Of a stretch of 64,000 bases of DNA, positions 6,277-43,906 are shown in pieces. The stretch's first letter is position 1, and the number at the start of each line of letters is the position of its first letter. The DNA lies in IMG/VR virus record IMGVR_UViG_3300022744_000022, positions 62,001-126,000 of that record; one strand, 5' to 3'. The notes under the pieces were generated by a model that saw only the letters and a list, made by a program, of their open reading frames with translations, did no database searches and was not told the DNA's origin. The position numbers and the translations under genes were made by a program.

Positions 6277-7165
6277 GGTCAACAGTTCAAACTGCCCGCT
6301 CTGTAAAGGGGCCCAATGGTTGTACGAGACCAAGGGCGAGGAAGTGATCCCGACCCGGTGTCGGTGCTTGGAGCGGAAGCTTCTGCACGACTTCCTGGGC
6401 CCGGAAATCTATCGCGCTCCCTGGGTCCCGTCGTCCCTGTACAACATCACGACCAACGAGGCCGGGGAGGTCGCGGGGGACCGGACAGAGGAAAACCTGT
6501 TCCTCAAGGGTTCGTGGGCCGTGGTTTGCCAGCACCTTCATTGGGCGCTCTCAGCTAAGCGTCTGTATAGCCCTAGGTTCAACTTCAAGATCGTGGGCAA
6601 CGACAAGCTCATGACAGTGTGGCTGGGTCTGGAGTCCTACACGCAACGGTCAACGGCGACTCGCAACGAGATCGAGACCAACAACAGCCTGGACGATCTT
6701 CTCGGCAACGCCGCTCTCGTGATCATCCGCCTCGATGGCCTTGAGCACCAGAACAAAGCGGCGGCCAACGTTCTGAAAGAGGCGCTCAAGGTCCGGGAAT
6801 TTGGGTACAAACCTACGTGGCTTGCCGAGTGCGGCCGTCGGTTTGGGCCCGGGCACCCGTCCTACAATGAAGCGGTTGGGGACTACATCGAAGAACGCTT
6901 CGACATTGTGGATCTCAGCGACGAAGATCCTAAGACCAGAGCGCAGCAAGCAGCCCTGGATGCAGCGGCCCAAGACATTATGGAGTCCGGTGAGGTCTCG
7001 ATGGGGGCCGATGTGGAAACGCCGCGTCTCGTGGACCCGCCAACTTCCAAGGAGCGCTTTTTTGCAGACCCCGAACCGGACCCTGAACCTGATTCTAGGC
7101 GTTACGTGCCAGGCGGTAAGGGTAAAAAACGCAACAAGGGCAAAGGCCAAGCGGAGCTTGAATAA
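6266..7165 (+). CDS. helicase-loader (DnaC/IstB-like) related protein, degenerate ATPase
   Basis: N-terminal CPLCKG...CRC Zn motif; directly upstream of DnaB; no recognisable Walker A. Confidence 0.45.
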   Translation: MPPEVNSSNCPLCKGAQWLYETKGEEVIPTRCRCLERKLLHDFLGPEIYRAPWVPSSLYNITTNEAGEVAGDRTEENLFLKGSWAVVCQHLHWALSAKRLYSPRFNFKIVGNDKLMTVWLGLESYTQRSTATRNEIETNNSLDDLLGNAALVIIRLDGLEHQNKAAANVLKEALKVREFGYKPTWLAECGRRFGPGHPSYNEAVGDYIEERFDIVDLSDEDPKTRAQQAALDAAAQDIMESGEVSMGADVETPRLVDPPTSKERFFADPEPDPEPDSRRYVPGGKGKKRNKGKGQAELE

Positions 7166-9936
7166 TGCCTAAGCGTCTACTTCGTTCCATCATCGAGTTC
7201 GATTCTGAGATCTCCTCGGAGAACCTCGTCCGTAACTTCCAACGTCTGCGGAAGGCCGTGGACGTTGGGCAGCTCGATTGGGGTCGTCCCGAAGACGAGA
7301 AGCTCTACAAGTACGCTCTCGGCTTCTTCATCCAGCACTTCGAGCTGCCGTCGGCTCAGACCTGCCTCGACTACTTTCAGAGCGTCAACAACGTTGAAGT
7401 CATCGAGCGTCTCAAGGATGTTCAGGTCGAGAAGCCGTACGCCCGCACGAACTTCGTGCATCTCTTGCGGACCCTGCAAGAGGATCAGGCCCGCCTAAAG
7501 GCCGTCGCGTTGCTCAAAGAGACGCACGAGATCCTGGTCAAGGGGATTGAAGACAAGAAGTCTGGGGTGGTTCAGAAGGGCGTTGAAGACGCCATCCTGC
7601 ACTTCACCAAGCGTTCGCAAGAGATCAGGGTCAACGACCACAACGTTCAGATCCACGGTGACATCCGGCAGGACGCTGAGCGGATGAAAGAGGAATACGC
7701 GACCGCTGAGAACGACAAGGGTAAGGTCATTGGCGTCCTGTCGGGCATCAACGAGCTGGATGAGTCTTGCAAGGGTGCCAAAAAGGGCGAGCTGTGGATG
7801 CACGCTGCATTTCCGGGCGAACTCAAGTGCGTTGCCGGGGATGCTACCCTTTTCGATCACGCAACCGGCAGGCTACGGACAGTTCGTGAGCTATTCGAGT
7901 CCGGAGATCTGCCTATTGTGACTGCGCTTGACCGTGAAGGTGAAACCCACAAACTTGTGCAGGCCCAGACTTCGCACCTTGTTGAAAACGGGATCAGGGA
8001 TGTTTACGAGTTATCGTTATCGTCTGGTCGATCTCTTGGGGCGAGCAACAACCACAAAGTCTTCACCCCCAAGGGGTGGCAACAATTGGATGCGTTGAGT
8101 GTCGGTGATTGGGTGGCTGTGCCGTCCATCATGCGAGCCGAACCGCCCAGAGCCTTCACAGATAGTGAGGTCAAAGCTGTTGGTTACTTAATTGGGGATG
8201 GTGCAGTAGACTACTACATCACCCTCACGAACTCTTGCCAGGCTGTGCGAGAGGACTTCAAAGGCTGCCTTCGTGACTTTGGGCTGCAAGAAGGTGCGGC
8301 GGACTACATCACCCCTAACTTCACTGAGAACTTCCCGGAAGACAGGGCACCTTTCATCCGAGTTAGTCACAGCTCGGGGTTGGGGAGTGCCGCAGTCCCA
8401 ACCTCAAGCCTACGCACGCTTCTGGAAGAGCTGGGGGTTTGGGGTTGCACGTCTCGCACAAAGCAAGTCCCTCAAGCGTTCTTAGGGCTTCCGGATGATC
8501 AGGTGGCGCTCTTTCTAGGTGCCCTTTGGGCAACCGACGGATCGTGCCACACAGGGGATCATGAGCGTGAGGACCGGGAATCCTTGTGTTCGCGTAATGA
8601 CATTTCTTACGCCTCGGTTAGCCGGGCCTTGTGTCTTGGGGTTCAATCTCTACTTCTGCGCCTTGGCATCCAGTCTACGGTTACAACGGTACAGACAACC
8701 TATCGAGGGGAACCCTACACGTTTTATTGTGTTCGTGTGGTAACCAACCCCTCGAAGCGGGTATTCGTAGAGCGGATCCAGGTCGCGGGTAAGGAAGATC
8801 GGTTTGCCGAACTTCAGCGTAGATTGCCCTCGACAGACAACCGTCCTTTCCCAACTGACTTCATCCCGGAGGGTATGAAGATCCGCTGGGTTGGGGTGAA
8901 CGGGGAACGGTGGCGTTACGCCACTAACACCAAAAACCGCCCGTCGGCGCAAGCAGACACACTACGTCTTTTTGCCACTGATCCGACTGTAGCGAAAGCC
9001 TTGGACGGGGACTTGGCATGGGAACAGGTGGCGTCTGTGCGGCTCCGTGGGCAGGAGATGACCTACGACCTTTCGGTCCCAGGGCACCACTCGTTTGTGG
9101 TGAACGACATCGTGACCCATAACACGATGCTTGCCTCGAACTGGTGCTACAACGCGGTCACTCGGTTCAAGAAGAATGTCGTGTATGTCTCGTTCGAGAT
9201 GCCTCGCGATCAGATTCGCCGCAACATCTACACGATCCACACTTCCAACGCCCGCTTCCTCAACCAAGGGTACCAAGGACTCGACTACCGTAACATTCGT
9301 GACGGTAACCTGACGAAGGCCGAGAAGGAGTTCTACTTCGACGGGGTGATCCCGGACTTCACCACAAACCCCACGTACGGCACGTTCGAGGTCGTGACCC
9401 CGGACCGTGAGTGGACCATGGAGGATGTGCGGTCTGAGCTTGAGCTTCTCCACAAGGAATTCGAGGTTGGGCTCGTGGTGCTCGACCACGGTCAGTGGAT
9501 TGAGGCTAAGAAGACCAAGAAGAACAAGGACTACACGATTGAGTTGAATTCCGTAATCACGGACGCTAAGCGGTTGGCTCTGAACTTTGATCACAACTCG
9601 GGCGTTCCTGTCTTGATGTTGTTCCAGATCAACCGTACGGGCAAAACGGACGCGGACAAGAACGAGGGCGTCTACAAGATGAACGCCTTGACTTACGCGA
9701 ACAACGCGGAGAAGACCGCTGACGTGATCACCACCACGTACCTCAACACTGAGATGCGTGCCGCTGGGATGACCAAGTTCACGAACCTCAAGAATCGAGA
9801 CAACCCGCTCTTTGACCCGTTTTCAGCCAACGTGAACTTTGGGTGGCGTCGTATCTCTAGCGGCAAGCGCATGGAGCCCCAGGGTTTTTCGGTGGACCAC
9901 CATTCCTCGTATCTGGGCGCTACGGAACAGGTCTAA
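7165..9936 (+). CDS. dnaB: DnaB-like replicative helicase containing an intein
   Basis: SGINELD...GELWMHAAFPGELK|TML (Walker A), YVSFEM, VVLDH, LFQINR, ADV, KNRD. Confidence 0.85.
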   Translation: MPKRLLRSIIEFDSEISSENLVRNFQRLRKAVDVGQLDWGRPEDEKLYKYALGFFIQHFELPSAQTCLDYFQSVNNVEVIERLKDVQVEKPYARTNFVHLLRTLQEDQARLKAVALLKETHEILVKGIEDKKSGVVQKGVEDAILHFTKRSQEIRVNDHNVQIHGDIRQDAERMKEEYATAENDKGKVIGVLSGINELDESCKGAKKGELWMHAAFPGELKCVAGDATLFDHATGRLRTVRELFESGDLPIVTALDREGETHKLVQAQTSHLVENGIRDVYELSLSSGRSLGASNNHKVFTPKGWQQLDALSVGDWVAVPSIMRAEPPRAFTDSEVKAVGYLIGDGAVDYYITLTNSCQAVREDFKGCLRDFGLQEGAADYITPNFTENFPEDRAPFIRVSHSSGLGSAAVPTSSLRTLLEELGVWGCTSRTKQVPQAFLGLPDDQVALFLGALWATDGSCHTGDHEREDRESLCSRNDISYASVSRALCLGVQSLLLRLGIQSTVTTVQTTYRGEPYTFYCVRVVTNPSKRVFVERIQVAGKEDRFAELQRRLPSTDNRPFPTDFIPEGMKIRWVGVNGERWRYATNTKNRPSAQADTLRLFATDPTVAKALDGDLAWEQVASVRLRGQEMTYDLSVPGHHSFVVNDIVTHNTMLASNWCYNAVTRFKKNVVYVSFEMPRDQIRRNIYTIHTSNARFLNQGYQGLDYRNIRDGNLTKAEKEFYFDGVIPDFTTNPTYGTFEVVTPDREWTMEDVRSELELLHKEFEVGLVVLDHGQWIEAKKTKKNKDYTIELNSVITDAKRLALNFDHNSGVPVLMLFQINRTGKTDADKNEGVYKMNALTYANNAEKTADVITTTYLNTEMRAAGMTKFTNLKNRDNPLFDPFSANVNFGWRRISSGKRMEPQGFSVDHHSSYLGATEQV
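7828..9123 (+). mobile_element. intein (432 aa) with LAGLIDADG homing endonuclease
   Basis: Starts CVAGDA, block B SNNHKVF, VGYLIGDG and FLGALWATDGS, ends TYDLSV...DIVTHN, +1 Thr. Confidence 0.93.
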
Positions 9937-22571: not shown

Positions 22572-23336
22572 ATGCGCACTGCCGTGATCCAGTTTCGCCC
22601 GCTACTCAAGGACGTACAGGGCAACCTTCATCGTTTAGCGCTGCTTGCTATGAAAGCGGCGCAGGCGAACGCAAAGTTGATTGTGCTTCCGGAGCTTGCC
22701 CTCACTGGTTACAGCTTCATGTCTGCGGCTGAGGTTGAACCCCTGGCGGAGGTCATCACAGCTTTCAAACCCGGCAGTGGGGACAGGACATCTAGTATGG
22801 GCGTCTTCCATGCTATTGCGAAGAAGTATGGTACGCATATCGCATGGGGGTTGATTGAAAAAGATGCGGGTACAGGCAAGCTTTTCAATGCCCAAGTCCT
22901 AATGTGTCCTGACGGGACCTTTGAATCGTATCGTAAAATAAATCACTTTTCTGCGGATTTCCTATGGGCTGCTGAGGGCCGTGCCAACCCTCCTATCCGT
23001 AAGATTGAAGTCGGGGGTAAAACCTACAAGGTTGGGCTTCTGATTTGCCGCGACGTTCGGGACAAGAAAGACGACTCCTGGAAGTCCTTCTATGAGAAGG
23101 GGGATGCGGATGTGGTGGTCCTGTCCGCTAACTGGGGTAAGGGCGGCTTCCCCGCAACTGCTTGGATGGATTTCGTTAAAGACAACGACACCATCTTGGC
23201 TGTAAGCAACAGGTACGGCGCAGAGATCCCTAACGACTTCGGTGAGGGTGGGGTCTGCATCATCTACCCGGACGGCACCGTGCAGTGCGACGGCCTCGTG
23301 TGGGGGCAGGACTGCATCGTCTACGGGGAAGTCTAG
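22572..23336 (+). CDS. carbon-nitrogen hydrolase (nitrilase superfamily)
   Basis: Catalytic triad motifs LPELALTG, YRKINH, LICRD. Confidence 0.85.
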   Translation: MRTAVIQFRPLLKDVQGNLHRLALLAMKAAQANAKLIVLPELALTGYSFMSAAEVEPLAEVITAFKPGSGDRTSSMGVFHAIAKKYGTHIAWGLIEKDAGTGKLFNAQVLMCPDGTFESYRKINHFSADFLWAAEGRANPPIRKIEVGGKTYKVGLLICRDVRDKKDDSWKSFYEKGDADVVVLSANWGKGGFPATAWMDFVKDNDTILAVSNRYGAEIPNDFGEGGVCIIYPDGTVQCDGLVWGQDCIVYGEV

Positions 23337-24232
23337 TGCTTTCATCCCGAGTAGCGCGCCGCTTCCAAGCCGCCTTGTCCGATCAGCTTGAGGACAAGAT
23401 GCGGGCGCTGCTGGCTAAGCCTTTGGATGCCGCTGAGGGTAAAGAGATCGCCCGGTGGTTACAGGACAACTTCTTTTTCTTGGGGACTAAGACCCCCAAG
23501 GGGCAGAAAGACCTCAAGGAGTCGATCAACAAGCTGCACTGGTTTCTTGCGCACGGAATCAGTCAGTCTGTAGATCCCGAGCGCTTGCGGGACACCATTG
23601 AGGCTGAGTGGCAGGTGGTGCAAAAGCGCCTGGGCGACCTTGCCAAATACTTCTCCGAAGAAGGCGGCAAGTCGGTCCCGAAAGAGATCAAGCAGGGCGG
23701 CAACACGTACCTGAACGTCTCAGGCTTCTACGAGGCCGACCTGATGAAGTTCGTCAAGCGTCTTGAGGCCGTGTTCGACATGCTCAAGGGTTGGCGTAAG
23801 AAAGCGTTGAGCGGGGGTGTCACGGTCGCCTTGGCGGGTCCCAAGGATTTCCGGGGTACCTCTGGGGGTAAGTACAAATCCGCCGACGACGTGCTGTACG
23901 TGCGTGCCACCCCGGATGTGTTGAAGCGCTCCAGTGGGAACTACGGAAGCTTCGAGTACATCATTGTGCATGAACTGGGCCACCGTTACGATTACAAGGT
24001 TCACCGGCCTTCTGTGGACTTTGACAAGGCTGAGTGGTGGACCAGCCGCTACAGCCGCAATGAGGGTGAGTCGTTTGCCGAGTTGTTCGCCCTCAGCAAC
24101 TTCGGGATTACGGGCCAAGGGGATCCCTTGAAACTGGACCGTTTTGAGGCGTTGATGGCAGGCCGGGATGAGCAGCCGAAGCCTGAGATCCCTGAGCACT
24201 TGAAGAAGTACCGGACACAGCCGACTTTTTGA
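23336..24232 (+). CDS. zincin-like metallopeptidase-domain protein with N-terminal RVARRF tag
   Basis: IIVHELGHRY...SRYS...ESFAELF. Confidence 0.65.
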   Translation: MLSSRVARRFQAALSDQLEDKMRALLAKPLDAAEGKEIARWLQDNFFFLGTKTPKGQKDLKESINKLHWFLAHGISQSVDPERLRDTIEAEWQVVQKRLGDLAKYFSEEGGKSVPKEIKQGGNTYLNVSGFYEADLMKFVKRLEAVFDMLKGWRKKALSGGVTVALAGPKDFRGTSGGKYKSADDVLYVRATPDVLKRSSGNYGSFEYIIVHELGHRYDYKVHRPSVDFDKAEWWTSRYSRNEGESFAELFALSNFGITGQGDPLKLDRFEALMAGRDEQPKPEIPEHLKKYRTQPTF

Positions 24233-24277
24233 GGCGTTCTGGAAAGTCCCTCTTTGCCGGTGTAGTGTACCCGGGCC

Positions 24278-25552
24278 ATGCCGAGAGAGCCCCAGGTACC
24301 CCGCTGCAACTTCTGTGGTCGTCCCCGCAATGAGGTCAAGCACCTCATTGGAGCGCCGGATGGGGCGAACATCTGCAACGGCTGTATCACCGCGACCTCT
24401 CAGGCTATCGATGAGGCTGAGCGCAAGTCCCCCGGGGCCAAGAAGGCTCAGGGCCCGCTCAAGAAGCCCAAGGAAATCACGGCGTTCGTGGACGAGCACG
24501 TGATCGGCCAGGATGCGGCCAAGCGGGAAATCGCCATCGCGGTCTACGAGCACTACCGCCGCCGGGAAGTAGACAAGAGCAAGAACGGCGTGATCATGCT
24601 CGACGGGGAAGCGGTCGAGATTGAGAAGTCCAACATCTTGCTGCTCGGGCCTTCGGGATCGGGCAAGACGCACATTGCCAGGACGATTGCCCGGTTGCTG
24701 GATGTTCCGTTCTACGTCGGGGATGCCACGAAGCTCACGAGTGCAGGCTACGTCGGGGAGGACGTGGAGTCGTTGCTTCAGGGGCTCTTGGCGGACGCTC
24801 AGAACGACATCGAGAAGGCACAGTGGGGCATCATCTTCCTGGACGAGTTTGACAAGCTGGCCCGCAAGGCTGGCTACGGGGCTTCCGGGATGCGGGATGT
24901 GACCGGCGAGGGTGTCCAGCAGGCCTTGCTCAAGCTTATTGAGGGTGGGCAGGTCGCGGTCCCCCGGGGCATGGGTTCCCGAGCGGTGTCCGGGATGATG
25001 CCTTCTGACGTGGTGGACACCCGGAACATCCTGTTCATCTGTGCCGGGTCCTTCGCAGGGATCGAGCCCGTGATCGAACGCAGGCTCAACAAGTCCACGG
25101 GCCTCGGGTTCGGCAAAGAGCACCGGAAGCAGCACGCCAAGTCCGACCTGTATCGAGAGGTCACGGTCGAGGACATTGAGGAATTCGGGTTGATTCCGGA
25201 GATCGTGGGCCGTCTGCCTGTGATCACCAGCACCTTGGAGTTGACCGAGGACGAGCTGATCCGCATCCTGACCGAGCCCAAGAATGCGATCTGCAAGCAG
25301 TTCCGGGCCTTGTTCTCGTTGGATGGGATTGACCTCCAGTTCGACCCTGAGGCATTGCGGGCGGTGGCTCAAAAGGCTCGGAAGCGGTCCACGGGTGCCC
25401 GAGCATTGCGAGCAATTCTCAAGGAAGTGCTCAAGCCTTACTCCTACGAGGCCCCGGATAACCTGGACATCTCGGCCATCCGCATTACCCCGGAGGCTGT
25501 CGAGACTCCTGGAAAGGCCCTCGTGATGCGAAAAGGCGTTGGGACGGCTTAG
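24278..25552 (+). CDS. clpX: ATP-dependent Clp protease ATP-binding subunit ClpX
   Basis: CNFC...ICNGC Zn domain, GPSGSGKT, GYVGEDVE, LDEFDK, RDVTGEGVQQALLK, LGF loop, TGARAL. Confidence 0.95.
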   Translation: MPREPQVPRCNFCGRPRNEVKHLIGAPDGANICNGCITATSQAIDEAERKSPGAKKAQGPLKKPKEITAFVDEHVIGQDAAKREIAIAVYEHYRRREVDKSKNGVIMLDGEAVEIEKSNILLLGPSGSGKTHIARTIARLLDVPFYVGDATKLTSAGYVGEDVESLLQGLLADAQNDIEKAQWGIIFLDEFDKLARKAGYGASGMRDVTGEGVQQALLKLIEGGQVAVPRGMGSRAVSGMMPSDVVDTRNILFICAGSFAGIEPVIERRLNKSTGLGFGKEHRKQHAKSDLYREVTVEDIEEFGLIPEIVGRLPVITSTLELTEDELIRILTEPKNAICKQFRALFSLDGIDLQFDPEALRAVAQKARKRSTGARALRAILKEVLKPYSYEAPDNLDISAIRITPEAVETPGKALVMRKGVGTA

Positions 25553-25576
25553 AGTTTTTGTGCTTTCTCGTAAGGC

Positions 25577-26257
25577 ATGGATGCTCTTTCGTTGCGTGTC
25601 GCCGCCCGGTTCGGGAGGATCGCTTTTGGCCAAGAAGGTAAGTTCTTGGGTCGAGACTGCCGCCTGACTTGGAGCAGGCACGGCTGGACCCTGGAAGAGC
25701 TGCCGGTCAAGGGCAAGAAAAAGTGCAAGGTGGCGGAGTTGCAGAACCCCGGGACTAGGGGTTGGGCAAACTTTGACGCTTACATCGACGGGAACATCCT
25801 GCGAGATGCGAAGCTGAGCGCTTCGGATTCGTACGAGACTATCAAGCAGAAGATGCTTGACGCTTACGAGTTGGCAGCGGAGCTGACCATCAACAAGATG
25901 ACGCCCGACGAAGCCAAGCATGCCTTGTGGCTCCGTGATCTCAAGTGGTACGAGAACGAGGTCCATTACCTCAAGATCACCCCTGAGAACACGGAACCCT
26001 TCGAGGCTGAGGGCAAGGACTACACGATCAAGGTCACGTGGACCAAGTTCTCAGTCTACTCCCCCGACTCGGACTTTCAGCAAAGTGACCCGTACTACAC
26101 GCAGTACGCGGAGTCCTCGGCCCAAGGGGCACGTAAGCTGTACCAGACTTTGAAAGCGGATCCGAACGCGCTCAAGAGCGTTCCTTGGTCCAAGCTGGGC
26201 GATTGGTTCATCAAGAACAAGATCCCCTACAAGACCAACTTCTCCCAGTGGACCTGA
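25577..26257 (+). CDS. hypothetical protein with N-terminal RVAARF tag
   Basis: MDALSLRVAARFGRIA... Confidence 0.7.
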   Translation: MDALSLRVAARFGRIAFGQEGKFLGRDCRLTWSRHGWTLEELPVKGKKKCKVAELQNPGTRGWANFDAYIDGNILRDAKLSASDSYETIKQKMLDAYELAAELTINKMTPDEAKHALWLRDLKWYENEVHYLKITPENTEPFEAEGKDYTIKVTWTKFSVYSPDSDFQQSDPYYTQYAESSAQGARKLYQTLKADPNALKSVPWSKLGDWFIKNKIPYKTNFSQWT

Positions 26258-26267
26258 GGCTAAACCG

Positions 26268-29147
26268 ATGACAAATCAAATTAGGACTGCGGGCCAGCTC
26301 AGGGCTGCTAGGTACCGCCTTCAGTGGCAAGGGGTTTTGGGCGATGGCCCTGTAACAGCTAAGCACCCAGAGCAGGAAGGTGTTTACGAAGTTACCGAGT
26401 ACGCTAATGGCGGCGCGGGGTGGCTGCTTAAAAAGAAGGCTACTGATCCCTCCGGTATTAGTGGCGGCCGTTTTCGTAGTCTAGAGTCCGCTATCAAGGA
26501 CGCTGAAGATCACGCTTTTGGAACTGGGCGTTGGCGGCACAAGACGGCTACAACAGCCGAACGAGTCCTGTCCCGCTTTGAGGAAGGCAAACCTGCCGAC
26601 CCCACGGAGAACATGAGTCCTGAGGACGCCAAGAAGTGGCGTGAGCAGACGGACGAGCACAAGGACGAGTTCAAGTCTGCGGCTGACAAGACGGCCACCA
26701 AGGTCGAGATCAAGCTACAGTACGACAGCCCTACGAGTGTCGGTAAGATCGTGTCGCCTTCGGGGCGAGCTGAATACTACTACACCCTCGGGAACGGCGC
26801 GAAGATGAGCTATTCCGACCGGGAGAAATTCCGGTACCAACTACGCAACCAAGCAAACGTGCGTGAAGCTGAGAAGTTGGTGAAGGAATTGGATCAGAAG
26901 GTGCCGTCCAAGACGGCCGCTGCAAAGAAGCCCTCGCGTCCCTCGGTTGAGGAAACCCCTGAGGAAAAGCGTTTCACGCAGGAACGTGAGAAGGTCGAGA
27001 AGGCGCTTGAGGACTTGCGGGAAGAGATCGCGGATCGCTTCCCTATCCCAGAGGATCGTCGGCATCCGCCGGAAGCACGCGAAGTCCTCAACCACTACCT
27101 TCTTGCGGATCGCCTGCAACACAAGGCGTTCATGCAGTCCGTGGGTGGTAACTCGGACGAGCCCTCAGTTCTCCGAGAAATGTTTGGGCTCTTGGCCAAG
27201 TCGGAAGCAGAGATCAAGAAGGCCAAGCGCTTGCTGGCTGAGGCGGCTGCTATGGAAAAGCGGAAGTCTGCTTCATCGGTTAGTGTGTTGACCCGCTTCC
27301 TGACAGCGGATCAGGACAAAGCGGCCCCCGAGCAGGTGGACAAGTATTTCAAGCAGGTCAAGAAGGACAACCCGTCCTACAGTGACTCGCAGGCCTACGC
27401 GACCGCGTGGTCCATCTACTGCAAGCACAAGAATCCTGGCTCGGAGTCGTGCCACCAGGACGAGTACCTGACGGGCAAGACGGCCGCTTGGAAGGCTCCC
27501 GCGATCAATCAGGCTCTCGCCAAGTTGATCGCCAAGAAGGTAGACCGCCATTTCGTCACGGACCTCTTGAACGAAAAGCTGTCGGGGCGTAGCTGGGAAG
27601 CCAAGCTGAAAGAGGCCATTGGGAAAGCCGTGGCCCCCACGCAAATGCGTGATCAGGTTGAAGCACAGCCCGCGATCAAGAAGTGGCTGGCGGACCTTTC
27701 GGATTCGGAGCTTTCCAAGATCCGTGACTTGCTAGAGGAAACCCTCAACCACGGCAAGAGTGAGCAGTACAAGGCCAAGCCCGACGCTTGGAAGACGGCC
27801 TCAAGCCCTCAAGAGCTGCATGAGATGCGCAAGATGTTGGAGCGTTCCGGGTACGACCCCGATGACGCCCAGGTCTTGCAAGAAGAGGGTATGGGCCCCG
27901 ATGAGCTGGCGGAGCGTCTTCGGGTTCGCCCCGGGGCCCCCGGCAGCCTTGGCTACTCGCACCGGCTCAAGTTGATGCTGGAGAAGAAGGCGCTGCAAGC
28001 CATCGCGTGGATGGAGCGCAACGGCTATCGTGAGGACCCCCTGCTGCGTGAGCTGCAACAGCAGCTTCGGCGCGGGACGCCGAGTGCCCTGGCAGGTGCC
28101 CAAGAGATCTTGGAATCCGCGATCGAGGCGTACGACATCCCGATCAAGTTGGCCTCGGATGTGACGGCGGCTCGTAAGCCCAAGAGCATCGCCGAGAAGA
28201 AGGACCTTCAACTGCTCATCGATCAGTTGAAGCGCAACCCGAAGGACGGGGACGCAGAGCGTGCTCTGCGTGGGGATTGGGAGTACCGAGACGCGGACAT
28301 CGCGAAGGTCAAGGCGCAGACCAAGACAGCGGGTGCTGGGGAGGACATGATCCCGCAGATCATTCAAGATCTATCCCGGATTCATGGCTTGGGTGCGGTC
28401 GAGGTCAACGATTTCTCCCGCCCCGGCGCATCTACAGTAGATTTTTCGGTGTTCGCTGATCTCAAAGTCACGGCTTCGGGGAGTGTTCAAACACGGCGTA
28501 ACGGACCTTACGAGAAGAAACCGTTGGAGTTTCAGGCTGATCTACGCAGTGTCAAAAACACGATCTTAAGTCTGTTGAAGAAGCACCGAGCATACGACGT
28601 GATGGTGGTGATGCCTCTGCGTAAGAATTCAGCGCAAGATCGCCTTTCTGAGCCGGGGCCAAAGTTTTATGACGATTCGATCGTGCGAATTTCATTTTCA
28701 CTCGCTTTACAAGCAAAGACCGCTGGGCACAGCTATGCCGTAGATAGCATGTCGGTCTTGTTCGTTGAGGGCCGTCGCATGACCCCGTTCAACCGCGACA
28801 CGATTGACGATATCAACCACACTTCGATCGAGGTTGTGGCTGACGATGGGGAGCTGCACGAGGCTAACCTGAAGTTTCTAGGCTACCAGTCTTCTGGGAT
28901 TTTGACGCGCATTGATGAGCAGAACGGTCTACGTCGTGAGACTCGCGTGGATGTCCAGTACCCGGTAGACGAGGGTGGGTCGTCCCAGACTTCGGCACGT
29001 ACGGCACTCTCGGCTTTGGTCCGCCTGGGTAAGAAACTCGACTTCCTCGTAGAGCCCGTAGCCCGTGGGTACCAACCCCAGCACCGTCAAACCAGCTTCG
29101 TAGCCAAACCGAAGGGACCTAAGAGCCCCTTCGGTAGGTTCCGGTGA
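26268..29147 (+). CDS. modular polyprotein-like protein with repeated KTA junctions
   Basis: 959 aa; seven KTA motifs separate short unrelated segments. Confidence 0.75.
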   Translation: MTNQIRTAGQLRAARYRLQWQGVLGDGPVTAKHPEQEGVYEVTEYANGGAGWLLKKKATDPSGISGGRFRSLESAIKDAEDHAFGTGRWRHKTATTAERVLSRFEEGKPADPTENMSPEDAKKWREQTDEHKDEFKSAADKTATKVEIKLQYDSPTSVGKIVSPSGRAEYYYTLGNGAKMSYSDREKFRYQLRNQANVREAEKLVKELDQKVPSKTAAAKKPSRPSVEETPEEKRFTQEREKVEKALEDLREEIADRFPIPEDRRHPPEAREVLNHYLLADRLQHKAFMQSVGGNSDEPSVLREMFGLLAKSEAEIKKAKRLLAEAAAMEKRKSASSVSVLTRFLTADQDKAAPEQVDKYFKQVKKDNPSYSDSQAYATAWSIYCKHKNPGSESCHQDEYLTGKTAAWKAPAINQALAKLIAKKVDRHFVTDLLNEKLSGRSWEAKLKEAIGKAVAPTQMRDQVEAQPAIKKWLADLSDSELSKIRDLLEETLNHGKSEQYKAKPDAWKTASSPQELHEMRKMLERSGYDPDDAQVLQEEGMGPDELAERLRVRPGAPGSLGYSHRLKLMLEKKALQAIAWMERNGYREDPLLRELQQQLRRGTPSALAGAQEILESAIEAYDIPIKLASDVTAARKPKSIAEKKDLQLLIDQLKRNPKDGDAERALRGDWEYRDADIAKVKAQTKTAGAGEDMIPQIIQDLSRIHGLGAVEVNDFSRPGASTVDFSVFADLKVTASGSVQTRRNGPYEKKPLEFQADLRSVKNTILSLLKKHRAYDVMVVMPLRKNSAQDRLSEPGPKFYDDSIVRISFSLALQAKTAGHSYAVDSMSVLFVEGRRMTPFNRDTIDDINHTSIEVVADDGELHEANLKFLGYQSSGILTRIDEQNGLRRETRVDVQYPVDEGGSSQTSARTALSALVRLGKKLDFLVEPVARGYQPQHRQTSFVAKPKGPKSPFGRFR

Positions 29148-29204: not shown

Positions 29205-30026
29205 ATGCCTTTCAGTGGTGTCGCAGAACGCATCCCCTACAGTCTGTCTCGTTGGACTGACGTTCCAAGCTCGAAGTGGTCTTGGTTCGAGGCGTGCCTC
29301 GATTCCAAGAAGATGGTGGCGTTTGACCCCCGGACCAGTGCCCCGGGGGTCTGGTCCCTGTCCCCTGAGGACACGTTGGGCCTCGTCTTCTGGACTAAGA
29401 ACCCGACTGCTTTGCTCCAAAGCCGGGCTCGCCTCGCTCCCTACGATGTGACGGTCCATGTGACGGCCACGGGTTGGCATGAAGTCGAGAAGGGTACCCC
29501 ATCTCTGGATGAAGCGGGCCGCTTGCTCGTACGGACAGCCAGGGTCTTCCCCAAGACCTACTGGCGATTCAGCCCCATTCCGATCCTACCCGATGCTGAG
29601 CTGTTCCGCCGGTTCCAGAGGCTTCTCGGGTTTGCGGCTATCGCGGGCATCCAACAATGCTTCGTCTCGTTCCTGCAAGAGAACGACAAGGTGCCGGAAT
29701 CTCGGACTCCGAAGTCCAGGTTCGCTCTCCTGAACACCTTGGCGGACGAGGCTCATGCTTTCGGGGTGCAGGTGGTGCTGTGTAAGGACGACCACACTTT
29801 TGATGGGTGGCCTGGCGCACGATTCACTACCGAAGCATGTGTACAGCCTGTGGACTTCGGTGGCCAAGATCGTGTACACCTGGAAGATTGTGGCTGCGTC
29901 CTGATGGTGGACCCTTTTACCATGAATGAGTCCTGCCATTTTGGCTGCCACTACTGCTACGCCTCAGACAAGAGTCTGTCCCCCAAGAAGCGGAACACGA
30001 CCCGCAGCTTGAACGTGGTGCGATGA
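29205..30026 (+). CDS. DUF1848-family (radical-SAM-like, C-terminal Cys cluster) protein
   Basis: SLSRWTDVP, VFWTKNP, WRFSPI, CGC...SCHFGCHYCYA. Confidence 0.75.
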   Translation: MPFSGVAERIPYSLSRWTDVPSSKWSWFEACLDSKKMVAFDPRTSAPGVWSLSPEDTLGLVFWTKNPTALLQSRARLAPYDVTVHVTATGWHEVEKGTPSLDEAGRLLVRTARVFPKTYWRFSPIPILPDAELFRRFQRLLGFAAIAGIQQCFVSFLQENDKVPESRTPKSRFALLNTLADEAHAFGVQVVLCKDDHTFDGWPGARFTTEACVQPVDFGGQDRVHLEDCGCVLMVDPFTMNESCHFGCHYCYASDKSLSPKKRNTTRSLNVVR

Positions 30027-39830: not shown

Positions 39831-40796
39831 TTGGACCAAGCCCTGCACTCTGAGCGTGTAGCTCACCGCTTCCTGATCGCCTCGTTCAAGCCGGGCGACT
39901 ACATCTTGTTCGGCAAGTTCCGGAACAAGCGTGGGCGCGTGGTCCGCATCTTCAACGATGAGCGGGACATCCCGTACATCGAGATTCAGCCGGTGCCCAA
40001 GGGCCGCAAGAAGAACAGGATTTTTGGGCTCTACACGATCCGCCAGATGACCCCTGAGGCCATCCAGGAAGCGCAGCAGTTGGAGGCGGCGGAACGGGCT
40101 CTCGTCCACAAGGTGGCGGCCCGTTACCTGGAAGCCACTCAGATGCCGCCTGGGTGGGTTGAGCACAAAGGGTCTGCGGGGCGTTCCTTTTGGATCAGCC
40201 CCGACGGTAAGGCGGAGATCAGCGACACGGGTCGTAAAGGCAGCCCGCAGCGCTTCCAGGTCTTCTTTCTTCAGGACGGGAAACGGCACGAGGACATCGG
40301 CTGGCCGTCCCTCAAGAAGGCGCTCCAGTACCTGAGTGGCGAAGTGGGGTTGAGTGCCCACCCAATGGCCAAGCGGGAGGGCGGCAACCTGGAGAACTTC
40401 CTGGACGGCTTCGCACGACGGCACTCTAGGCTTGGGCGGCTTCTCCCTAAGGTCGTGGAGAAAGCTCAAGGATCCAGCTCGGGGCACGGAGAAGCTCGCC
40501 AACACGGTAACGAGATCTGGCTGTTCCCGAAGTTCTGGGACCTCGATCTCAAGACCCAAGATTTCGTACTGGCTCACGAGATCGGGCACTATGCGTTGAG
40601 TCGGAAACCCGGCACCTGGTTGATGGACCTCGGGAAAGAGCTGGGCGTTGACGTGTGGGACACGGGCAGCCTACCCTTCGGACAGTTCAATCAAGACGAG
40701 GCGTTCGCGGATTCCTTTGCTAGTTACTTCTTAGAGCCGGGTGAACTGCGGAGACGCTACCCTGCTTGGGTTACTTTCGTTGAGGCCGTCCTGTGA
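39831..40796 (+). CDS. multi-module protein: KOW-like, unknown and zincin HExxH modules, two RVAxRF-type tags
   Basis: RVAHRFLIA, FKPGDYILFGKFRNKRGRV, KVAARYLEA, LAHEIGH...EAFADSFA. Confidence 0.7.
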   Translation: MDQALHSERVAHRFLIASFKPGDYILFGKFRNKRGRVVRIFNDERDIPYIEIQPVPKGRKKNRIFGLYTIRQMTPEAIQEAQQLEAAERALVHKVAARYLEATQMPPGWVEHKGSAGRSFWISPDGKAEISDTGRKGSPQRFQVFFLQDGKRHEDIGWPSLKKALQYLSGEVGLSAHPMAKREGGNLENFLDGFARRHSRLGRLLPKVVEKAQGSSSGHGEARQHGNEIWLFPKFWDLDLKTQDFVLAHEIGHYALSRKPGTWLMDLGKELGVDVWDTGSLPFGQFNQDEAFADSFASYFLEPGELRRRYPAWVTFVEAVL

Positions 40797-43700
40797 ACAC
40801 CATGCAAACACGATTGGTCGAACGCTTCACACGGGTAGGGGCCTACTCCGAGGACACCCTAGAGATTGTTGCGGCCGGTCTTGCTCTACTGATCGCGCAG
40901 AACTACATCGTCACCAACCCCTTCTTCGATGAGAAGGAGATCCGAAACTACCTGCTGTTGCGCAAGCAGTTTCACGGGGACTTCGTTCAAGCGTGCCTGG
41001 ACTTGGCAGACGCCTTTGAAGAGGGGCAGTTCGGTCAGGCGGTTCTACCCGCTGTCCCAGCCTTGCGGGCCATCGGGCATCTCGGGGTCAAGCAGGATCA
41101 GCAAGCAATCCGCCAACTCGCAAGAGCGTTCCGAGGGCTCAAGCACCTCAAGTACCGGGATGTCGAAAACCCGAAGCTCATGCGTCTCATCATGATGGCG
41201 CGTAAACTTGATGTCACCACCGGGGCAGATGGTAGGGACATCAAGGACTTCTTGGAGAATCTTGTTAAGATCCAGGCGGTGCCGACAAGACTCCGGACCC
41301 TTCTTCGCAAAGTCATCAAGTTGCCCGTCCCGGGCAGGACGCTCACCGAGAATGCCGATCCAGGCGCTTGGTTCGAGATGCCCGAGGACAAGAAACAAAG
41401 CCTTCGCGAGCTGACCGAGAAGGTTGAGCAAGAGCAGCTTGGGATCTGGGAGAAGTACAAAGACGCCAGTGACGATGAGCGGATGGCGGCTTACCAGAGT
41501 GCTGCCCGTCGCCTACAGAAGATTCAGAGCATCGCAGGCGTGAACCTGGGTGTTATCAAGCGTGACGATGAGGTCCCGCTTGACACGCTTTTGAAGAAGG
41601 AAACGCGACTCGAATCCGACGGACCGACGGAGTACACACGACTCAAAATTGAGGACTACCTCAAAAAGACAGGGGCGTACCGCTTCCAGCGCAAGGAAGG
41701 TGATCCGCTACCTCGTGAGGTCAGCAAGCTGCTCACATTGTTGCGCAAGGCCAAGACCTTCTCGACAATGCAGCGCGTGATCAAGGATGCTGTGGATCGT
41801 CAGGTGTTGGGCAGGGCGTCCACCGAAGATGTCGATCACATCATCACGCAAGCGAACAAGAACCGGGCGTTGAAAGAGGGGAAACCTCTCACGCCTCTAC
41901 AGTTCGAGCCTAAGAGCGTAGAGCAGTTTCAGGTGGACCACGATACGGGCCCCGTGGCGTTCGACCCTGAGTACACGGATGACGAAAAGAAGCAGTTGCT
42001 GGGTCGTGTCTCCCGTGCTTTGAGTGATCTAGAGAGTGTCTACGGAAAAGGCTTCTGTGGTAAGCATGCCAAGAAGCTCGCGTTCCGTTTCAACAAGGGG
42101 TACAGCGGGACCGCTTCCGCTCACTACTTCGTTTGGGATGACCGTCGGACGTGGCAACCCAGGGTAACGTTTGGTCCGGAGTTCGAGGGCCTCTTGGCTC
42201 ACGAACTCTCGCACTACCTGGAAGACTTGCTGGCGTACCAGATTCAGAAGCAGGACGAACCAGAGCGCATCGAGGCCCTCCTGGGTAAAGGGATCGAGGG
42301 AGGACCAGGCGTCCTGTTCTCCAACACGGGGGTGTCCCTGAGGCTCTTCGCTGAGGGTGGTGCCCTGGAGAGTTACCGAGGACACCTAAGTAAGTCGGTC
42401 CCGGAGTTCGTTGAGTTCATCGACGCCGTGCTTGCAACCCCGGACTACAAGCGCTGGGAGGACAAGCTTGGATCAGCGTACGACACCGCACTGCCCATGG
42501 CCATCAAGGCGCTGACAGGGATGAGCTACTACGACTTGCCCAAAGAGCACCCGTACTACGGTTTGATCGACAAGGCGCAATACCGCTCGGACCTGCCCCC
42601 GGAAGTGAACGACGAGACTCAGAAGCAGTTCAAGAACCTGATGGATGGGGATGGGCGCAAGCTCAACTACTACAACAGCTCCACCGAGGTCTGGGCCCGG
42701 ATGTGCGAGCAGTACGTGTACAACCGGCTGATCGATGCGGGGATCTCGAACCCCTGGCTCACACAGATGAACTACGAGGAAGATGTCTTCATGAACGAGA
42801 AGACCTTCGATACGCAGTTACGTCCGATTATGGACAAGATCTTCGCCAAGCTGAAAGGCCGCAAACTCATTGCCAGTGTGCCCATGAGCCCCTTGCGTGA
42901 ACGTCTGGCAGACCGCTTCTTGCTCATCAATCGGGTAGCTGCTCGTTACAAAGAGAAGAAGCAGGTAAAGTCGGAGGACGGCGGCAAGACTACCGTCTAC
43001 GTCTACTCTGAGCGGCAGATCGCCAATCGGAACAAGGCGAAGGCTGAGCGAGTCCAAAAGCTCAGCGGCGCTATCAAGAAGCTGAGGGCCAAGGTCAAGA
43101 AGGACTTGGGGTCCAAGGATCCTGAGACGGCTCGTACAGCACTCGCGGTGGCCCTCATGGATCATACCTATGAGCGAGTTGGCAACGAGAGTTCTGCCAA
43201 GGACGGGCACTTCGGGGTCACGGGGTGGCAGCGTAAGCACGTGAGCTTCGGCAAGGACGGGGCGTTCATCAAGTACGTGGGCAAGTCCGGGGTCAAGCAC
43301 GAGAAGAAGGTCACGGACTCGGCGATCCGTAGTGCGTTGAAGGCTGCTTACGACTCCCTGGAAGGTGATGACACGGGCGTTCTGGAGTGGGACGGGGGCA
43401 AGGTCACGGCCGAGAAGGTGAACCAGTACCTGGAGCCCTTTGACGTTACGGCCAAGGACATCCGTGGCTTCCACGCCAACGACCAGATGCGGGTCAACCT
43501 CAAGAGCGTGCGCTCGAAGGGCGGCTCGCTTCCTGAGGACAAGAAGAAGCGTGAGGACAAGCTCAAGAAGGAGTTCGCGGAAGCTCTTGAAGCGACCGCA
43601 GAGTGCGTGGGGCACGAGGCCGCTACACTCAAGAATCAGTACCTTGTCCCCGGCCTAGAGGACTCGTTTCTCAAGGATGGGACGGTCATCGACAAGCTCG

Positions 43701-43906
43701 GGAGCCAACACGAAGACGAGATCCCCGGCGGCTTGGCGGACAAGAAAAAGCCAAGCGACTTTGACCCCAAGCAACTCGCCAAGGGAATCAAGGTCGAGCT
43801 GGAGCACACCGATGATCGAAATCTCGCGCAAGAGATCTCGATGGATCACTTGACCGAAGATCCGGATTACTACAGCAAGCTTGAGAAGATGGAGTCGGAA
43901 AAATGA
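40793..43906 (+). CDS. large polyvalent protein: HExxH/LPD1-like, type IB DNA topoisomerase and DUF5661-like domains
   Basis: HELSH; STEVWARMCEQYV; RVGNE, YVGKSG, TAKDIR, VGH...NQY; GIKVELEHT...DHLTEDPDYYSKL. Confidence 0.85.
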   Translation: MNTMQTRLVERFTRVGAYSEDTLEIVAAGLALLIAQNYIVTNPFFDEKEIRNYLLLRKQFHGDFVQACLDLADAFEEGQFGQAVLPAVPALRAIGHLGVKQDQQAIRQLARAFRGLKHLKYRDVENPKLMRLIMMARKLDVTTGADGRDIKDFLENLVKIQAVPTRLRTLLRKVIKLPVPGRTLTENADPGAWFEMPEDKKQSLRELTEKVEQEQLGIWEKYKDASDDERMAAYQSAARRLQKIQSIAGVNLGVIKRDDEVPLDTLLKKETRLESDGPTEYTRLKIEDYLKKTGAYRFQRKEGDPLPREVSKLLTLLRKAKTFSTMQRVIKDAVDRQVLGRASTEDVDHIITQANKNRALKEGKPLTPLQFEPKSVEQFQVDHDTGPVAFDPEYTDDEKKQLLGRVSRALSDLESVYGKGFCGKHAKKLAFRFNKGYSGTASAHYFVWDDRRTWQPRVTFGPEFEGLLAHELSHYLEDLLAYQIQKQDEPERIEALLGKGIEGGPGVLFSNTGVSLRLFAEGGALESYRGHLSKSVPEFVEFIDAVLATPDYKRWEDKLGSAYDTALPMAIKALTGMSYYDLPKEHPYYGLIDKAQYRSDLPPEVNDETQKQFKNLMDGDGRKLNYYNSSTEVWARMCEQYVYNRLIDAGISNPWLTQMNYEEDVFMNEKTFDTQLRPIMDKIFAKLKGRKLIASVPMSPLRERLADRFLLINRVAARYKEKKQVKSEDGGKTTVYVYSERQIANRNKAKAERVQKLSGAIKKLRAKVKKDLGSKDPETARTALAVALMDHTYERVGNESSAKDGHFGVTGWQRKHVSFGKDGAFIKYVGKSGVKHEKKVTDSAIRSALKAAYDSLEGDDTGVLEWDGGKVTAEKVNQYLEPFDVTAKDIRGFHANDQMRVNLKSVRSKGGSLPEDKKKREDKLKKEFAEALEATAECVGHEAATLKNQYLVPGLEDSFLKDGTVIDKLGSQHEDEIPGGLADKKKPSDFDPKQLAKGIKVELEHTDDRNLAQEISMDHLTEDPDYYSKLEKMESEK

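What the first reader, a model, noticed from the sequence alone, without database searches (positions are those of the whole stretch)
26268..29147. 959-aa beads-on-a-string protein punctuated by seven KTA sites
Seen: KTA codons start at 26541, 26688, 26910, 27477, 27792, 28323 and 28716, with variants IRTA, KSA (twice), KLA and FLTA. A rough composition estimate predicts under one KTA by chance. Segments between sites are about 50-190 aa and mutually unrelated. Codon style also shifts at the boundaries (26280-26540 and 28380-28720 look richer in A/T than their neighbours). Inference: a polyprotein assembled by accreting small modules between protease sites and cut into many effectors, a strategy rarely described for dsDNA phages.
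Basis: partly seen in the sequence, partly recalled or inferred. Interest (0 to 1): 0.78.

Follow-up and report, generated by a model that had tools for sequence, protein, structure and literature searches.

The report
Huge-phage modular protein with KTA junctions
A 959-residue protein of an uncultured huge phage is built from about ten unrelated small modules joined by a conserved Lys-Thr-Ala motif. The motif recurs at module junctions in hundreds of related phage proteins and travels with a papain-like peptidase, so it is probably a cut site that releases many small proteins from one gene.

Summary
ORF 26268-29147 (+) encodes 959 aa with KTA at the seven stated positions, against 0.41 expected (P about 2.5e-7). 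Only one other KTA occurs in about 19,800 aa of other window ORFs.

The motif is not a quirk of this gene.
- Of 756 related cluster representatives, nearly all from metagenomes, the 162 proteins fetched hold 376 KTA against 54 expected, usually followed by A, G or S.
- Homology blocks start and end at the KTA positions, and the modules occur in other orders, in tandem, and as stand-alone small genes.
- KTA codons vary synonymously, so selection acts on the protein.
- The two A/T-richer segments are real (GC3 0.51 and 0.54 against 0.68-0.79) and are the modules with few or no relatives.
- An AlphaFold model shows separate confident domains, with five of seven KTA in low-confidence linkers.

Cleavage is inferred, not shown. 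In another huge-phage clade a C39-like cysteine peptidase with an intact Q/C/H/D set is fused to, or overlaps the start of, KTA-rich proteins. KTA is about five times denser there than in neighbouring genes. No such peptidase lies in this window. Its conserved neighbours are a ClpX-like ATPase and a 226-aa unknown protein.

Verdict: an undescribed, peptidase-linked variant of phage polyvalent proteins. Module functions are mostly unknown; Tad3 occurs in two homologues.

The parts
26268..29147 (+). ORF of the 959-aa modular protein (P0001), including the stop codon
   Evidence: No Pfam or PHROG family matches. 756 related cluster representatives.
26268..26540 (+). Module A (aa 1-91). It starts with a short leader, MTNQ-IRTA-G. 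GC3 is low (0.505), it has few relatives, and the model confidence is low.
   Evidence: N-terminal leaders of the form MTN...KTA occur in P0012, P0014 and P0016.
26541..26549 (+). KTA site 1 (aa 92-94)
   Evidence: Lies in a pLDDT<50 segment.
26550..26687 (+). Module B (aa 95-140), a 45-aa helical unit (VLSRFEEGKPADPTxNMSPEDAxxW...HKDxF). It is the commonest module of the family and is often tandem in homologues.
   Evidence: About 300 HSPs. Tripeptide enrichment. pLDDT 87-93.
26688..26696 (+). KTA site 2 (aa 141-143), at the junction between the helical module B and the beta-rich module C
   Evidence: HSPs end at aa 139-141.
26697..26909 (+). Module C (aa 144-214), beta sheet plus helices. 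In P0052 and P0066 it follows module E instead.
26910..26918 (+). KTA site 3 (aa 215-217)
   Evidence: Abuts the low-confidence segment 217-227. HSPs end at 218-224 and start at 217.
26919..27272 (+). Module D (aa 218-335), long helical hairpins
   Evidence: Shared with P0002, P0024 and P0053.
27315..27323 (+). Degenerate junction KAA (aa 350-352) inside the linker aa 336-352. The orthologous position in P0007 reads KTA.
27324..27476 (+). Module E (aa 353-403; VDKYF...AWSIYCKH...SCHQDEYL). It also exists as stand-alone genes of 74-180 aa that begin MPSPVDKYF.
27477..27485 (+). KTA site 4 (aa 404-406)
   Evidence: Lies in low-confidence segment 397-405. Many HSPs end at 404-408 and start at 404-408.
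27486..27791 (+). Module F (aa 407-508), a helical domain with pLDDT above 90. It is duplicated in tandem in P0002 and stands alone in P0083.
27792..27800 (+). KTA site 5 (aa 509-511)
   Evidence: Moderate pLDDT dip. About 20 HSPs start at 509-516.
27801..28322 (+). Modules G and H (aa 512-600 and 601-685), helical, with a low-confidence stretch at 629-675
28323..28331 (+). KTA site 6 (aa 686-688)
   Evidence: Lies in low-confidence segment 684-691. HSPs end at 685-689.
28332..28715 (+). Module I (aa 689-816), alpha/beta. GC3 is low (0.542) and it has essentially no relatives among the homologues, so it looks like a recent or foreign insert.
28716..28724 (+). KTA site 7 (aa 817-819), immediately before the conserved C-terminal domain. 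The Ala-Gly that follows K and T is at least 90% conserved in 29 homologues.
28725..29102 (+). Module J (aa 820-945), the constant C-terminal alpha/beta domain of the syntenic orthologues. Its fold matches nothing known.
   Evidence: Alignment A2. Model pLDDT 86.6. No fold match with TM of 0.5 or more.
29103..29144 (+). Basic C-terminal tail ending in F-G-R-F-R. The F-P-F-R type ending recurs in homologues.
24278..25552 (+). ClpX-like ATPase with a zinc finger, Walker A motif, GYVG pore loop and LGF loop. It is a conserved upstream neighbour in all syntenic relatives.
25577..26257 (+). 226-aa protein of unknown function. It lies directly upstream in five of six syntenic loci and has an N-terminal R-V-A-A-R-F leader.
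   Evidence: No family or atlas match.
23336..24232 (+). HExxH (HELGH) zincin-like metallopeptidase candidate. It is present next to ClpX only here and in L007.
29205..30026 (+). DUF1848 protein, a conserved downstream neighbour

Best explanation
The gene encodes a hyper-modular polyvalent protein of an uncultured huge phage (contig 291 kb). About ten unrelated, separately folding modules have been strung in front of a constant C-terminal domain. Each joint carries the short motif K-T-A followed by a small residue.

The most likely role of that motif is as the recognition and cut site of a phage-encoded peptidase, probably cutting after the Ala. On this reading one translation product is chopped into many small proteins. 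New modules can then be added or swapped at any KTA joint without disturbing the others.

What is shown:
- the motif, its enrichment and its conservation at the protein level;
- the modular architecture;
- shuffling of modules at the joints;
- compositional heterogeneity between segments;
- the genomic linkage of KTA-rich proteins with an active-looking C39-like cysteine peptidase in related huge phages.

What is inferred:
- that cleavage occurs at all;
- the scissile bond;
- which enzyme acts in this particular phage, since no C39-like gene lies in the window (candidates are a peptidase elsewhere in the genome, or the nearby HExxH protein);
- that the released modules act on the host (anti-defence or takeover);
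- whether they are virion-delivered or made early in the cell.
For: 1. Enrichment: 7 KTA against 0.41 expected in the window protein. There are 376 against 54 expected in 162 family members, and 132 of the 162 have at least one.
2. Context: 344 distinct KTA contexts show no extended conservation except A, G or S at the next position (221 of 344). That is the signature of a short linear motif rather than part of a domain.
3. Synonymous codons vary freely at KTA: 12 different 9-mers at 15 sites.
4. Homology blocks begin and end at the seven KTA positions. Module order differs among homologues, with K-x-A at the joints. Syntenic orthologues range from about 160 to 1033 aa. The minimal form reads M-KTA-8 aa-KTA-G-J domain.
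5. Module E exists as separate genes that begin exactly where the residue after KTA lies in the fused forms. Other stand-alone copies carry a 15-20 aa leader ending in K-S/A-A.
6. In the structure model, five of seven KTA lie in or abut pLDDT<50 linkers between confident domains, and pTM is 0.32. The J domain model starts at KTA817.
7. Four family members have an N-terminal C39-like peptidase fused to KTA-punctuated modules. In L001 and L004 the peptidase ORF overlaps the start of the KTA protein by 4 nt.
8. The peptidase keeps an invariant Gln, Cys, His and Asp, and its domain ends in ...Q-V-[VM]-A-[SG].
9. In 55 non-redundant IMG/VR loci chosen only by the peptidase motif, KTA occurs 90 times against 15.8 expected in the peptidase-linked ORFs, and 59 against 45 in the other ORFs. 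Only tripeptides of the neighbouring GLYGF motif are more enriched.
10. Two homologues carry a Tad3 anti-Thoeris domain as one module.
11. In relatives the locus sits beside VgrG-like, peptidoglycan-binding and TopoIB genes. A bona fide LPD1 polyvalent protein lies 11.6 kb downstream in the window.
Against: - There is no direct evidence of cleavage for any member. The phages are uncultured, and no paper describing the motif was found.
- No C39-like peptidase lies in the 64-kb window or in the 20-kb syntenic loci of its closest relatives. Their contigs were not among the 80 listed C39 loci.
- The HExxH neighbour is present in only two of the syntenic loci.
- KTA is not depleted in other proteins of these genomes: 5 against 8.7 expected in the syntenic loci, and 39 against 40 in the 485-kb genome LR745208.1. 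A promiscuous KTA-specific protease is therefore not indicated.
- KTA141 and KTA509 are not in clearly disordered linkers.
- In the J-domain model the KTA sits in a short strand next to the domain and could be structural.
- A general test of gene starts against internal K-x-A gave only modest enrichment: 7.5% against 3.3%.
Confidence: 0.58

Rival explanations
1. KTA is a conserved joint that is not cut. It would be a short docking or hinge motif, for example recognised by the adjacent ClpX-like unfoldase, a chaperonin or a packaging factor. The protein would then work as one long beads-on-a-string scaffold that presents many binding modules at once.
For: - The ClpX-like gene is the invariant neighbour in all syntenic loci. 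It keeps its pore loop and ClpP-docking-like LGF loop.
- Cpn60 genes lie near the C39-type loci.
- No peptidase is linked in this clade.
- KTA is not avoided elsewhere in the proteome.
- Some KTA sites lie only 10-14 aa apart, as in KTA-x-GLYGF-x-KTA, which would release tiny peptides if cut.
Against: - Fusion or translational coupling of an active-looking cysteine peptidase with KTA-rich proteins across 55 loci.
- Stand-alone modules occur both with and without removable-looking leaders that end in K-x-A.
- Small residues are required at and after the Ala, which is typical of papain-like and C39 sites.
Confidence: 0.25
2. The protein is an internal head or ejection protein. KTA would be the site of the capsid maturation (prohead) protease, as with T4 internal proteins or phiKZ and SPN3US inner-body and ejection proteins. 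The dedicated C39-like enzyme would then be irrelevant to it.
For: - Short N-terminal leaders ending in KTA resemble capsid-targeting propeptides.
- Giant-phage head proteins are cut at several short motifs (PMC10052503).
- Relatives sit near VgrG-like and cell-wall-binding genes.
Against: - The gene lies among replication and nucleotide-metabolism genes, not head genes.
- In the complete 485-kb relative, KTA is not over-represented overall (39 against 40 expected). The other ORFs with KTA showed no virion domains.
- The major capsid protein and the prohead protease of these phages were not identified, so this rival was not properly tested.
Confidence: 0.12
3. The motif reflects DNA-level events. 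It would be a 9-bp recombination or cassette-exchange site, or simply chance and low-complexity composition, with no role in the protein.
For: Four of the seven sites in the window read AAGACGGCC. The modules clearly move by recombination.
Against: - Across five loci, 15 sites use 12 different 9-mers while the peptide is conserved.
- Amino-acid variants K-S/R/K/E-A keep the K and A.
- Shuffles never reach 7.
- Enrichment holds in an independent data set chosen through the peptidase.
Confidence: 0.03

Closest known systems
Polyvalent proteins of phages and conjugative elements (Iyer, Burroughs, Anand, de Souza, Aravind 2017; PMC5512222)
   Same: - Many unrelated domains sit in one phage polypeptide.
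- Domain shuffling between relatives is rampant.
- The proteins are predicted to act early against the host.
- Embedded peptidase domains are predicted to autoprocess the protein.
- A classical member (HExxH + LPD1 + TopoIB + DUF5661) lies in the same window.
   Different: - The window protein has none of the hallmark domains (LPD, MuF, MPTase, ART, etc.).
- Its modules are small (45-190 aa) and almost all unknown.
- The joints carry a conserved tripeptide. A search of that paper for cleavage-related terms found no such joint motif.
- The linked peptidase is a C39-like cysteine peptidase rather than the zincin MPTase.
Double-glycine leader peptides cut by C39 peptidase domains (bacteriocin/PCAT systems). 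This comparison rests on my own knowledge of the family.
   Same: - A papain-like peptidase with Gln/Cys/His/Asp.
- Small residues at the cut.
- Short leaders precede the cargo.
- The peptidase is encoded next to, or fused with, what it processes.
   Different: - The motif here is K-T-A then A/G/S, not G-G/A/S.
- Sites are internal and multiple rather than a single leader.
- There is no ABC transporter.
- The substrates are folded protein modules of phages.
Prohead-protease processing of head, internal and ejection proteins: T4 gp21 (L/I-x-E) from my own knowledge; SPN3US gp245 (A-x-E), with phiKZ homologues also cleaved (PMC10052503)
   Same: A short three-residue motif, multiple cuts per protein, removable N-terminal propeptides, and giant phages.
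   Different: The motif is different. The gene is not in a head module. The linked enzyme is a cysteine peptidase. The products appear to be the modules themselves rather than one mature protein plus discarded propeptide.
MARTX toxins and viral polyproteins (for example ASFV pp220/pp62 cut at G-G-X). This comparison rests on my own knowledge.
   Same: A mosaic of effector modules, or mature proteins, released from one chain by a cysteine protease at short linker sites. The module repertoire varies by recombination.
   Different: The organisms, folds and delivery routes are unrelated. No homology was detected.

Membership tests
Polyvalent proteins (PMC5512222) | Several (2-15) unrelated domains in one polypeptide of a phage or plasmid | tested here: met
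   About ten mutually unrelated modules. The genome is a huge phage.
Polyvalent proteins (PMC5512222) | Presence of hallmark domains (LPD1-n, MuF, MPTase, ART, ArdC-N, etc.) | tested here: not met
   No Pfam family reaches threshold in the window protein. Among 152 homologues only Tad3, DUF7007 and C39 were found.
Polyvalent proteins (PMC5512222) | Extensive domain shuffling between homologues | tested here: met
Polyvalent proteins (PMC5512222) | Packaged in the virion and delivered with the DNA | not testable with these tools
   Only context is available: VgrG-like, PG-binding and TopoIB neighbours in relatives, but replication-gene neighbours in the window.
Proteolytically processed polyprotein | Conserved short site at every junction between mature products | tested here: met
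   KTA or K-x-A at module joints in the window protein and its homologues
Proteolytically processed polyprotein | A cognate protease encoded in cis or nearby | tested here: inconclusive
   A C39-like peptidase is fused or adjacent in the other clade. None is in this window or its syntenic relatives. An HExxH protein lies two genes upstream, but only in 2 loci.
Proteolytically processed polyprotein | Cleavage products observed | not testable with these tools
   No proteomic data. The phages are uncultured.
Peptidase C39 (for the linked enzyme of the relatives) | Papain-like catalytic Cys and His with oxyanion Gln and Asp/Asn | tested here: met
   Q13, C16, H99 and D119 are invariant in 15 sequences. 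Pfam C39 and C39_2 hits.
Peptidase C39 substrates (double-glycine leaders) | G-G, G-A or G-S at the cut, preceded by an amphipathic leader | tested here: not met
   The motif is K-T-A followed by A/G/S. Gly at the position before Ala is not seen.
T4-type internal proteins / capsid targeting sequence | N-terminal targeting peptide ending in L/I-x-E, with the gene in the head module | tested here: not met
   There is no such motif at the joints. The gene lies between ClpX and DUF1848 among replication genes.
Tad3 Thoeris inhibitor | PF25185 domain | tested here: not met
   Absent from the window protein. Present only in homologue P0005 and one other.

The most novel reading that the evidence does not exclude
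Huge phages possess a widespread, undescribed plug-and-play effector polyprotein system. A dedicated C39-like cysteine peptidase cuts at K-T-A before a small residue. Any small gene, including anti-defence proteins such as Tad3, can then be spliced into one translation unit and still be released as a free protein. In the clade of this window the peptidase gene has moved or been replaced, and a phage ClpX with a 226-aa partner is the constant companion. The shared N-terminal R-V-A-x-R-F leader may mark a set of proteins handled by the same route.
Probability: 0.4. Interest if true: 0.85.

Novelty: new variant of a known kind. Interest (0 to 1): 0.72.

Why it matters
If the joints are cut, this is a polyprotein strategy in double-stranded DNA phages that is defined by a simple, recognisable site. 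It would explain how huge phages accrete and exchange many small host-directed proteins at one hypervariable locus.

It would give a practical rule, split at K-T-A, for finding the real functional units in hundreds of large 'hypothetical' proteins. That opens a large pool of unknown small modules, at least one of them a known anti-defence protein, to screening. It would also add a new specificity and a new biological role to the C39 peptidase family.

Even if the joints are not cut, a three-residue motif conserved at domain joints across more than 700 protein clusters still needs an explanation.

Tried and rejected
- Pfam and PHROG scans of the protein: nothing.
- Nucleotide and protein BLAST against 50,697 phage records: a single 64-aa match to the uncultured phage LR745208.1.
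- Fold searches of the C-terminal domain model and of the full-length model against PDB, ESM Atlas, AFDB clusters and BFVD: no match with TM of 0.5 or more.
- Atlas feature searches of aa 404-686 and of the 226-aa neighbour: uninformative.
- A first MAFFT alignment of 141 module fragments was misaligned and discarded. Alignment A4 was checked before folding.
- Genome-wide avoidance of KTA as evidence for a free protease: not found.
- Whether other KTA-bearing ORFs of LR745208.1 are virion proteins: no domains except a UvrD helicase with an intein.
- Search for the C39-like peptidase in the window and, through contig lengths, in the window's genome: negative but not exhaustive.
- The R-V-x-x-R-F element is not generally adjacent to KTA (9 of 344 sites), so it was dropped as part of the site.
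- The 226-aa neighbour shows no similarity to the peptidase.
- The DNA-level recombination-site idea was rejected on synonymous variation.
- Literature searches found no description of the motif.
Full report
**Observation.** The window holds an ATG-initiated ORF at 26268-29147 on the + strand that encodes 959 residues. From the protein's own composition 0.41 are expected (Poisson P = 2.5e-7), and none of 10,000 shuffles exceeded four. The rest of the window, about 19,800 residues of ORFs, holds a single KTA. The eight inter-KTA segments are unrelated to each other. GC3 is 0.505 for residues 1-91 and 0.542 for residues 686-816, against 0.68-0.79 elsewhere in the gene and 0.74 +/- 0.08 in other long genes. 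Those two segments are the ones with few or no relatives.

**Setting.** The window is the replication and nucleotide-metabolism region of an uncultured huge phage. The protein's own record sits on a 291-kb contig, and a 208-kb IMG/VR version also exists. Genes in the window include:
- an SNF2 helicase;
- DnaB with an intein;
- a family A polymerase;
- ThyX;
- an HNH endonuclease;
- a C-N hydrolase;
- a 1037-aa protein combining an HExxH motif, LPD1, a type IB topoisomerase and DUF5661, that is, a classical polyvalent protein.

Genes on the + strand from about 22.5 to 30 kb are tightly packed. No promoter-like or terminator-like signal exceeds chance. Directly upstream lie an HExxH protein (23336-24232), a ClpX-like ATPase (24278-25552) and a 226-aa unknown protein (25577-26257). 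A DUF1848 gene lies downstream.

**The family.** The protein matches no Pfam or PHROG family, and only one record among 50,697 phage genomes. An exhaustive profile-free search found 756 cluster representatives at E of 1e-3 or better. The matches are piecewise. The best-matching stretches begin and end at the query's KTA positions, for example 217-512, 404-508, 509-600 and 817-941. I call the pieces A to J.
- B is a 45-aa helical unit that is very common and often tandem.
- E and J also exist as stand-alone small genes.
- Architectures differ freely: B-D-E-F-F-...-J, B-E-J, B-B-E-J, E-C, B-C-B and F-B-B, with K-x-A at the joints.

Five syntenic loci share ClpX, the 226-aa gene, the variable protein and DUF1848. 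The variable protein ranges from about 160 to 959 aa in these loci, and to 1033 aa in a further syntenic fragment (P0005). The shortest is essentially M-KTA-eight residues-KTA-G-J domain. So this is a hypervariable locus in which modules accrete in front of a constant C-terminal domain.

**The motif.** In the 162 proteins fetched, KTA occurs 376 times against 54 expected, and 132 of the proteins have at least one. There are 344 distinct contexts. Only about 18% follow module B, and the only other conserved position is the next residue (A, G or S in 221 of 344). At orthologous joints K and A are kept while T may be S, R, K or E. Before the J domain the Ala-Gly is at least 90% conserved while K and T vary. 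Codons vary synonymously, with 12 different 9-mers at 15 sites, so selection is on the peptide and a DNA recombination site is excluded.

**Structure.** An AlphaFold model of the J domain (29-sequence alignment, mean pLDDT 86.6) begins at KTA817. A full-length model (44 rows, alignment checked) has mean pLDDT 70.6 and pTM 0.32. It shows confident blocks separated by low-confidence stretches at 217-227, 336-352, 397-405, 684-691 and 812-819. Five of the seven KTA lie in or abut such stretches. One of the five (KTA92) lies in the long poorly modelled N-terminal stretch 12-108. The decayed site KAA350 lies in another low-confidence stretch. KTA141 and KTA509 sit at transitions between secondary-structure blocks. 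No predicted domain spans a KTA. No module found a convincing structural relative.

**A linked peptidase.**
- In LR745208.1 and in a 210-kb contig, a Peptidase_C39_2 gene overlaps the start of the family member by 4 nt.
- Four family members carry the same peptidase fused at their N-terminus, followed by KTA-punctuated modules.
- The domain keeps invariant Gln, Cys, His and Asp, and ends in ...Q-V-[VM]-A-[SG], which resembles the joint motif.
- I took 80 IMG/VR loci found only through the peptidase. KTA density was 1.8-2.0 per 1000 aa in the peptidase ORF and the next ORF, against 0.36 in the other ORFs.
- After removing redundancy (55 loci), KTA was 90 observed against 15.8 expected in the linked ORFs, and 59 against 45 elsewhere. 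Only tripeptides of the flanking GLYGF motif were more enriched.

This independent data set ties the motif to the peptidase.

**What remains open.**
- Cleavage has not been observed anywhere.
- The window and its syntenic relatives show no C39-like gene nearby. Their contigs were not among the listed peptidase loci. One 497-kb contig has both a J-domain gene and the peptidase, far apart.
- The HExxH neighbour (HELGH, with zincin-like features in the atlas search) accompanies ClpX only here and in one relative.
- ClpX, with an intact pore loop and an LGF loop, and the 226-aa protein are the constant companions. Their role is unknown.
- KTA is not avoided in other proteins. If a protease acts, it needs context or co-localisation.

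**Function of the products.** Two homologues carry Tad3, a Thoeris inhibitor, as one module. Relatives sit beside VgrG-like, peptidoglycan-binding and TopoIB genes. These fit host-directed, possibly injected proteins, as proposed for polyvalent proteins (PMC5512222; PMC9503650). This is inference.

**Comparison with the known.** The closest concept is the polyvalent protein with an embedded autoprocessing peptidase (PMC5512222). The differences are the absence of hallmark domains, the small size and obscurity of the modules, the conserved tripeptide at each joint and the C39-like enzyme. Giant-phage prohead proteases cut at A-x-E at several places per protein (PMC10052503), but the motif, the enzyme class and the gene location all differ here. 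Double-glycine leaders cut by C39 domains share the enzyme class and small residues at the cut, but not the motif or the multi-site layout (my own knowledge). I found no paper describing the motif.

**Verdict.** I rate it a new variant of a known kind and of high interest.

Noticed in passing
window 23336-23380, 25577-25640, 39831-39880, 40802-40850: Four ORFs start with the same short signature M-x(2-8)-R-[VL]-[AV]-x-R-F. They are the HExxH protein, the 226-aa protein, ORF 39831-40796 and the TopoIB/LPD1 protein. The signature is invariant in five orthologues of the 226-aa protein. It recurs in leaders of stand-alone E and J modules of the KTA family. It may be a targeting or propeptide signal.
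   Followed up: partly
window 40793-43906: A 1037-aa polyvalent protein combining an HExxH motif (LAHELSH), LPD1, a type IB topoisomerase core and a C-terminal DUF5661. In relatives TopoIB is a separate gene, once directly after a C39-polyprotein (L108).
   Followed up: partly
window 24278-25552; L101 5389-7707: The phage ClpX-like ATPase has a zinc finger, Walker A motif, GYVG pore loop and an LGF tripeptide where ClpX docks ClpP. In the close relative L101 the orthologue is interrupted by about 1 kb between residues 127 and 128, which may be an intein or a homing element.
   Followed up: no
window 7165-9936: The DnaB-like helicase carries an intein with a LAGLIDADG domain. A UvrD-like helicase of LR745208.1 (300620-305863) also carries an intein and ends in a repeated KTADDDLIA.
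   Followed up: no
window 26550-26687 and homologues: Pfam OAS1_C scores above its gathering cut-off (26-28 bits against 19.9) on the 45-aa module B in 16 homologues. The match is to a short P-A-D-P-T...W stretch and is probably a motif resemblance, not homology.
   Followed up: partly
window 29103-29144; alignment A2: A basic C-terminal tail ending in F-P-F-R or F-G-R-F-R is conserved after the J domain in several homologues. It could be a docking peptide.
   Followed up: no
window 23720-25966 (- strand): A 748-aa antisense ORF lies opposite the ClpX and 226-aa genes. It has no support and looks like a G+C-rich open-frame artefact. It misleads greedy ORF pickers.
   Followed up: partly
P0002 residues 244-486; L001 10691-12076; P0160, P0134, P0124: P0002 has a tandem duplication of module F with a doubled joint (KTA-DA-KTA). 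The C39-linked clade has a recurrent block KTA-x-GLYGF...KTA-K-LGL-x-AC and a conserved C-terminal ...DFLAS...SKC ending.
   Followed up: no
L002 1-746: A Cas12f1-like TNB (TnpB-type) gene lies 9 kb upstream of the orthologous locus in the 411-kb relative.
   Followed up: no
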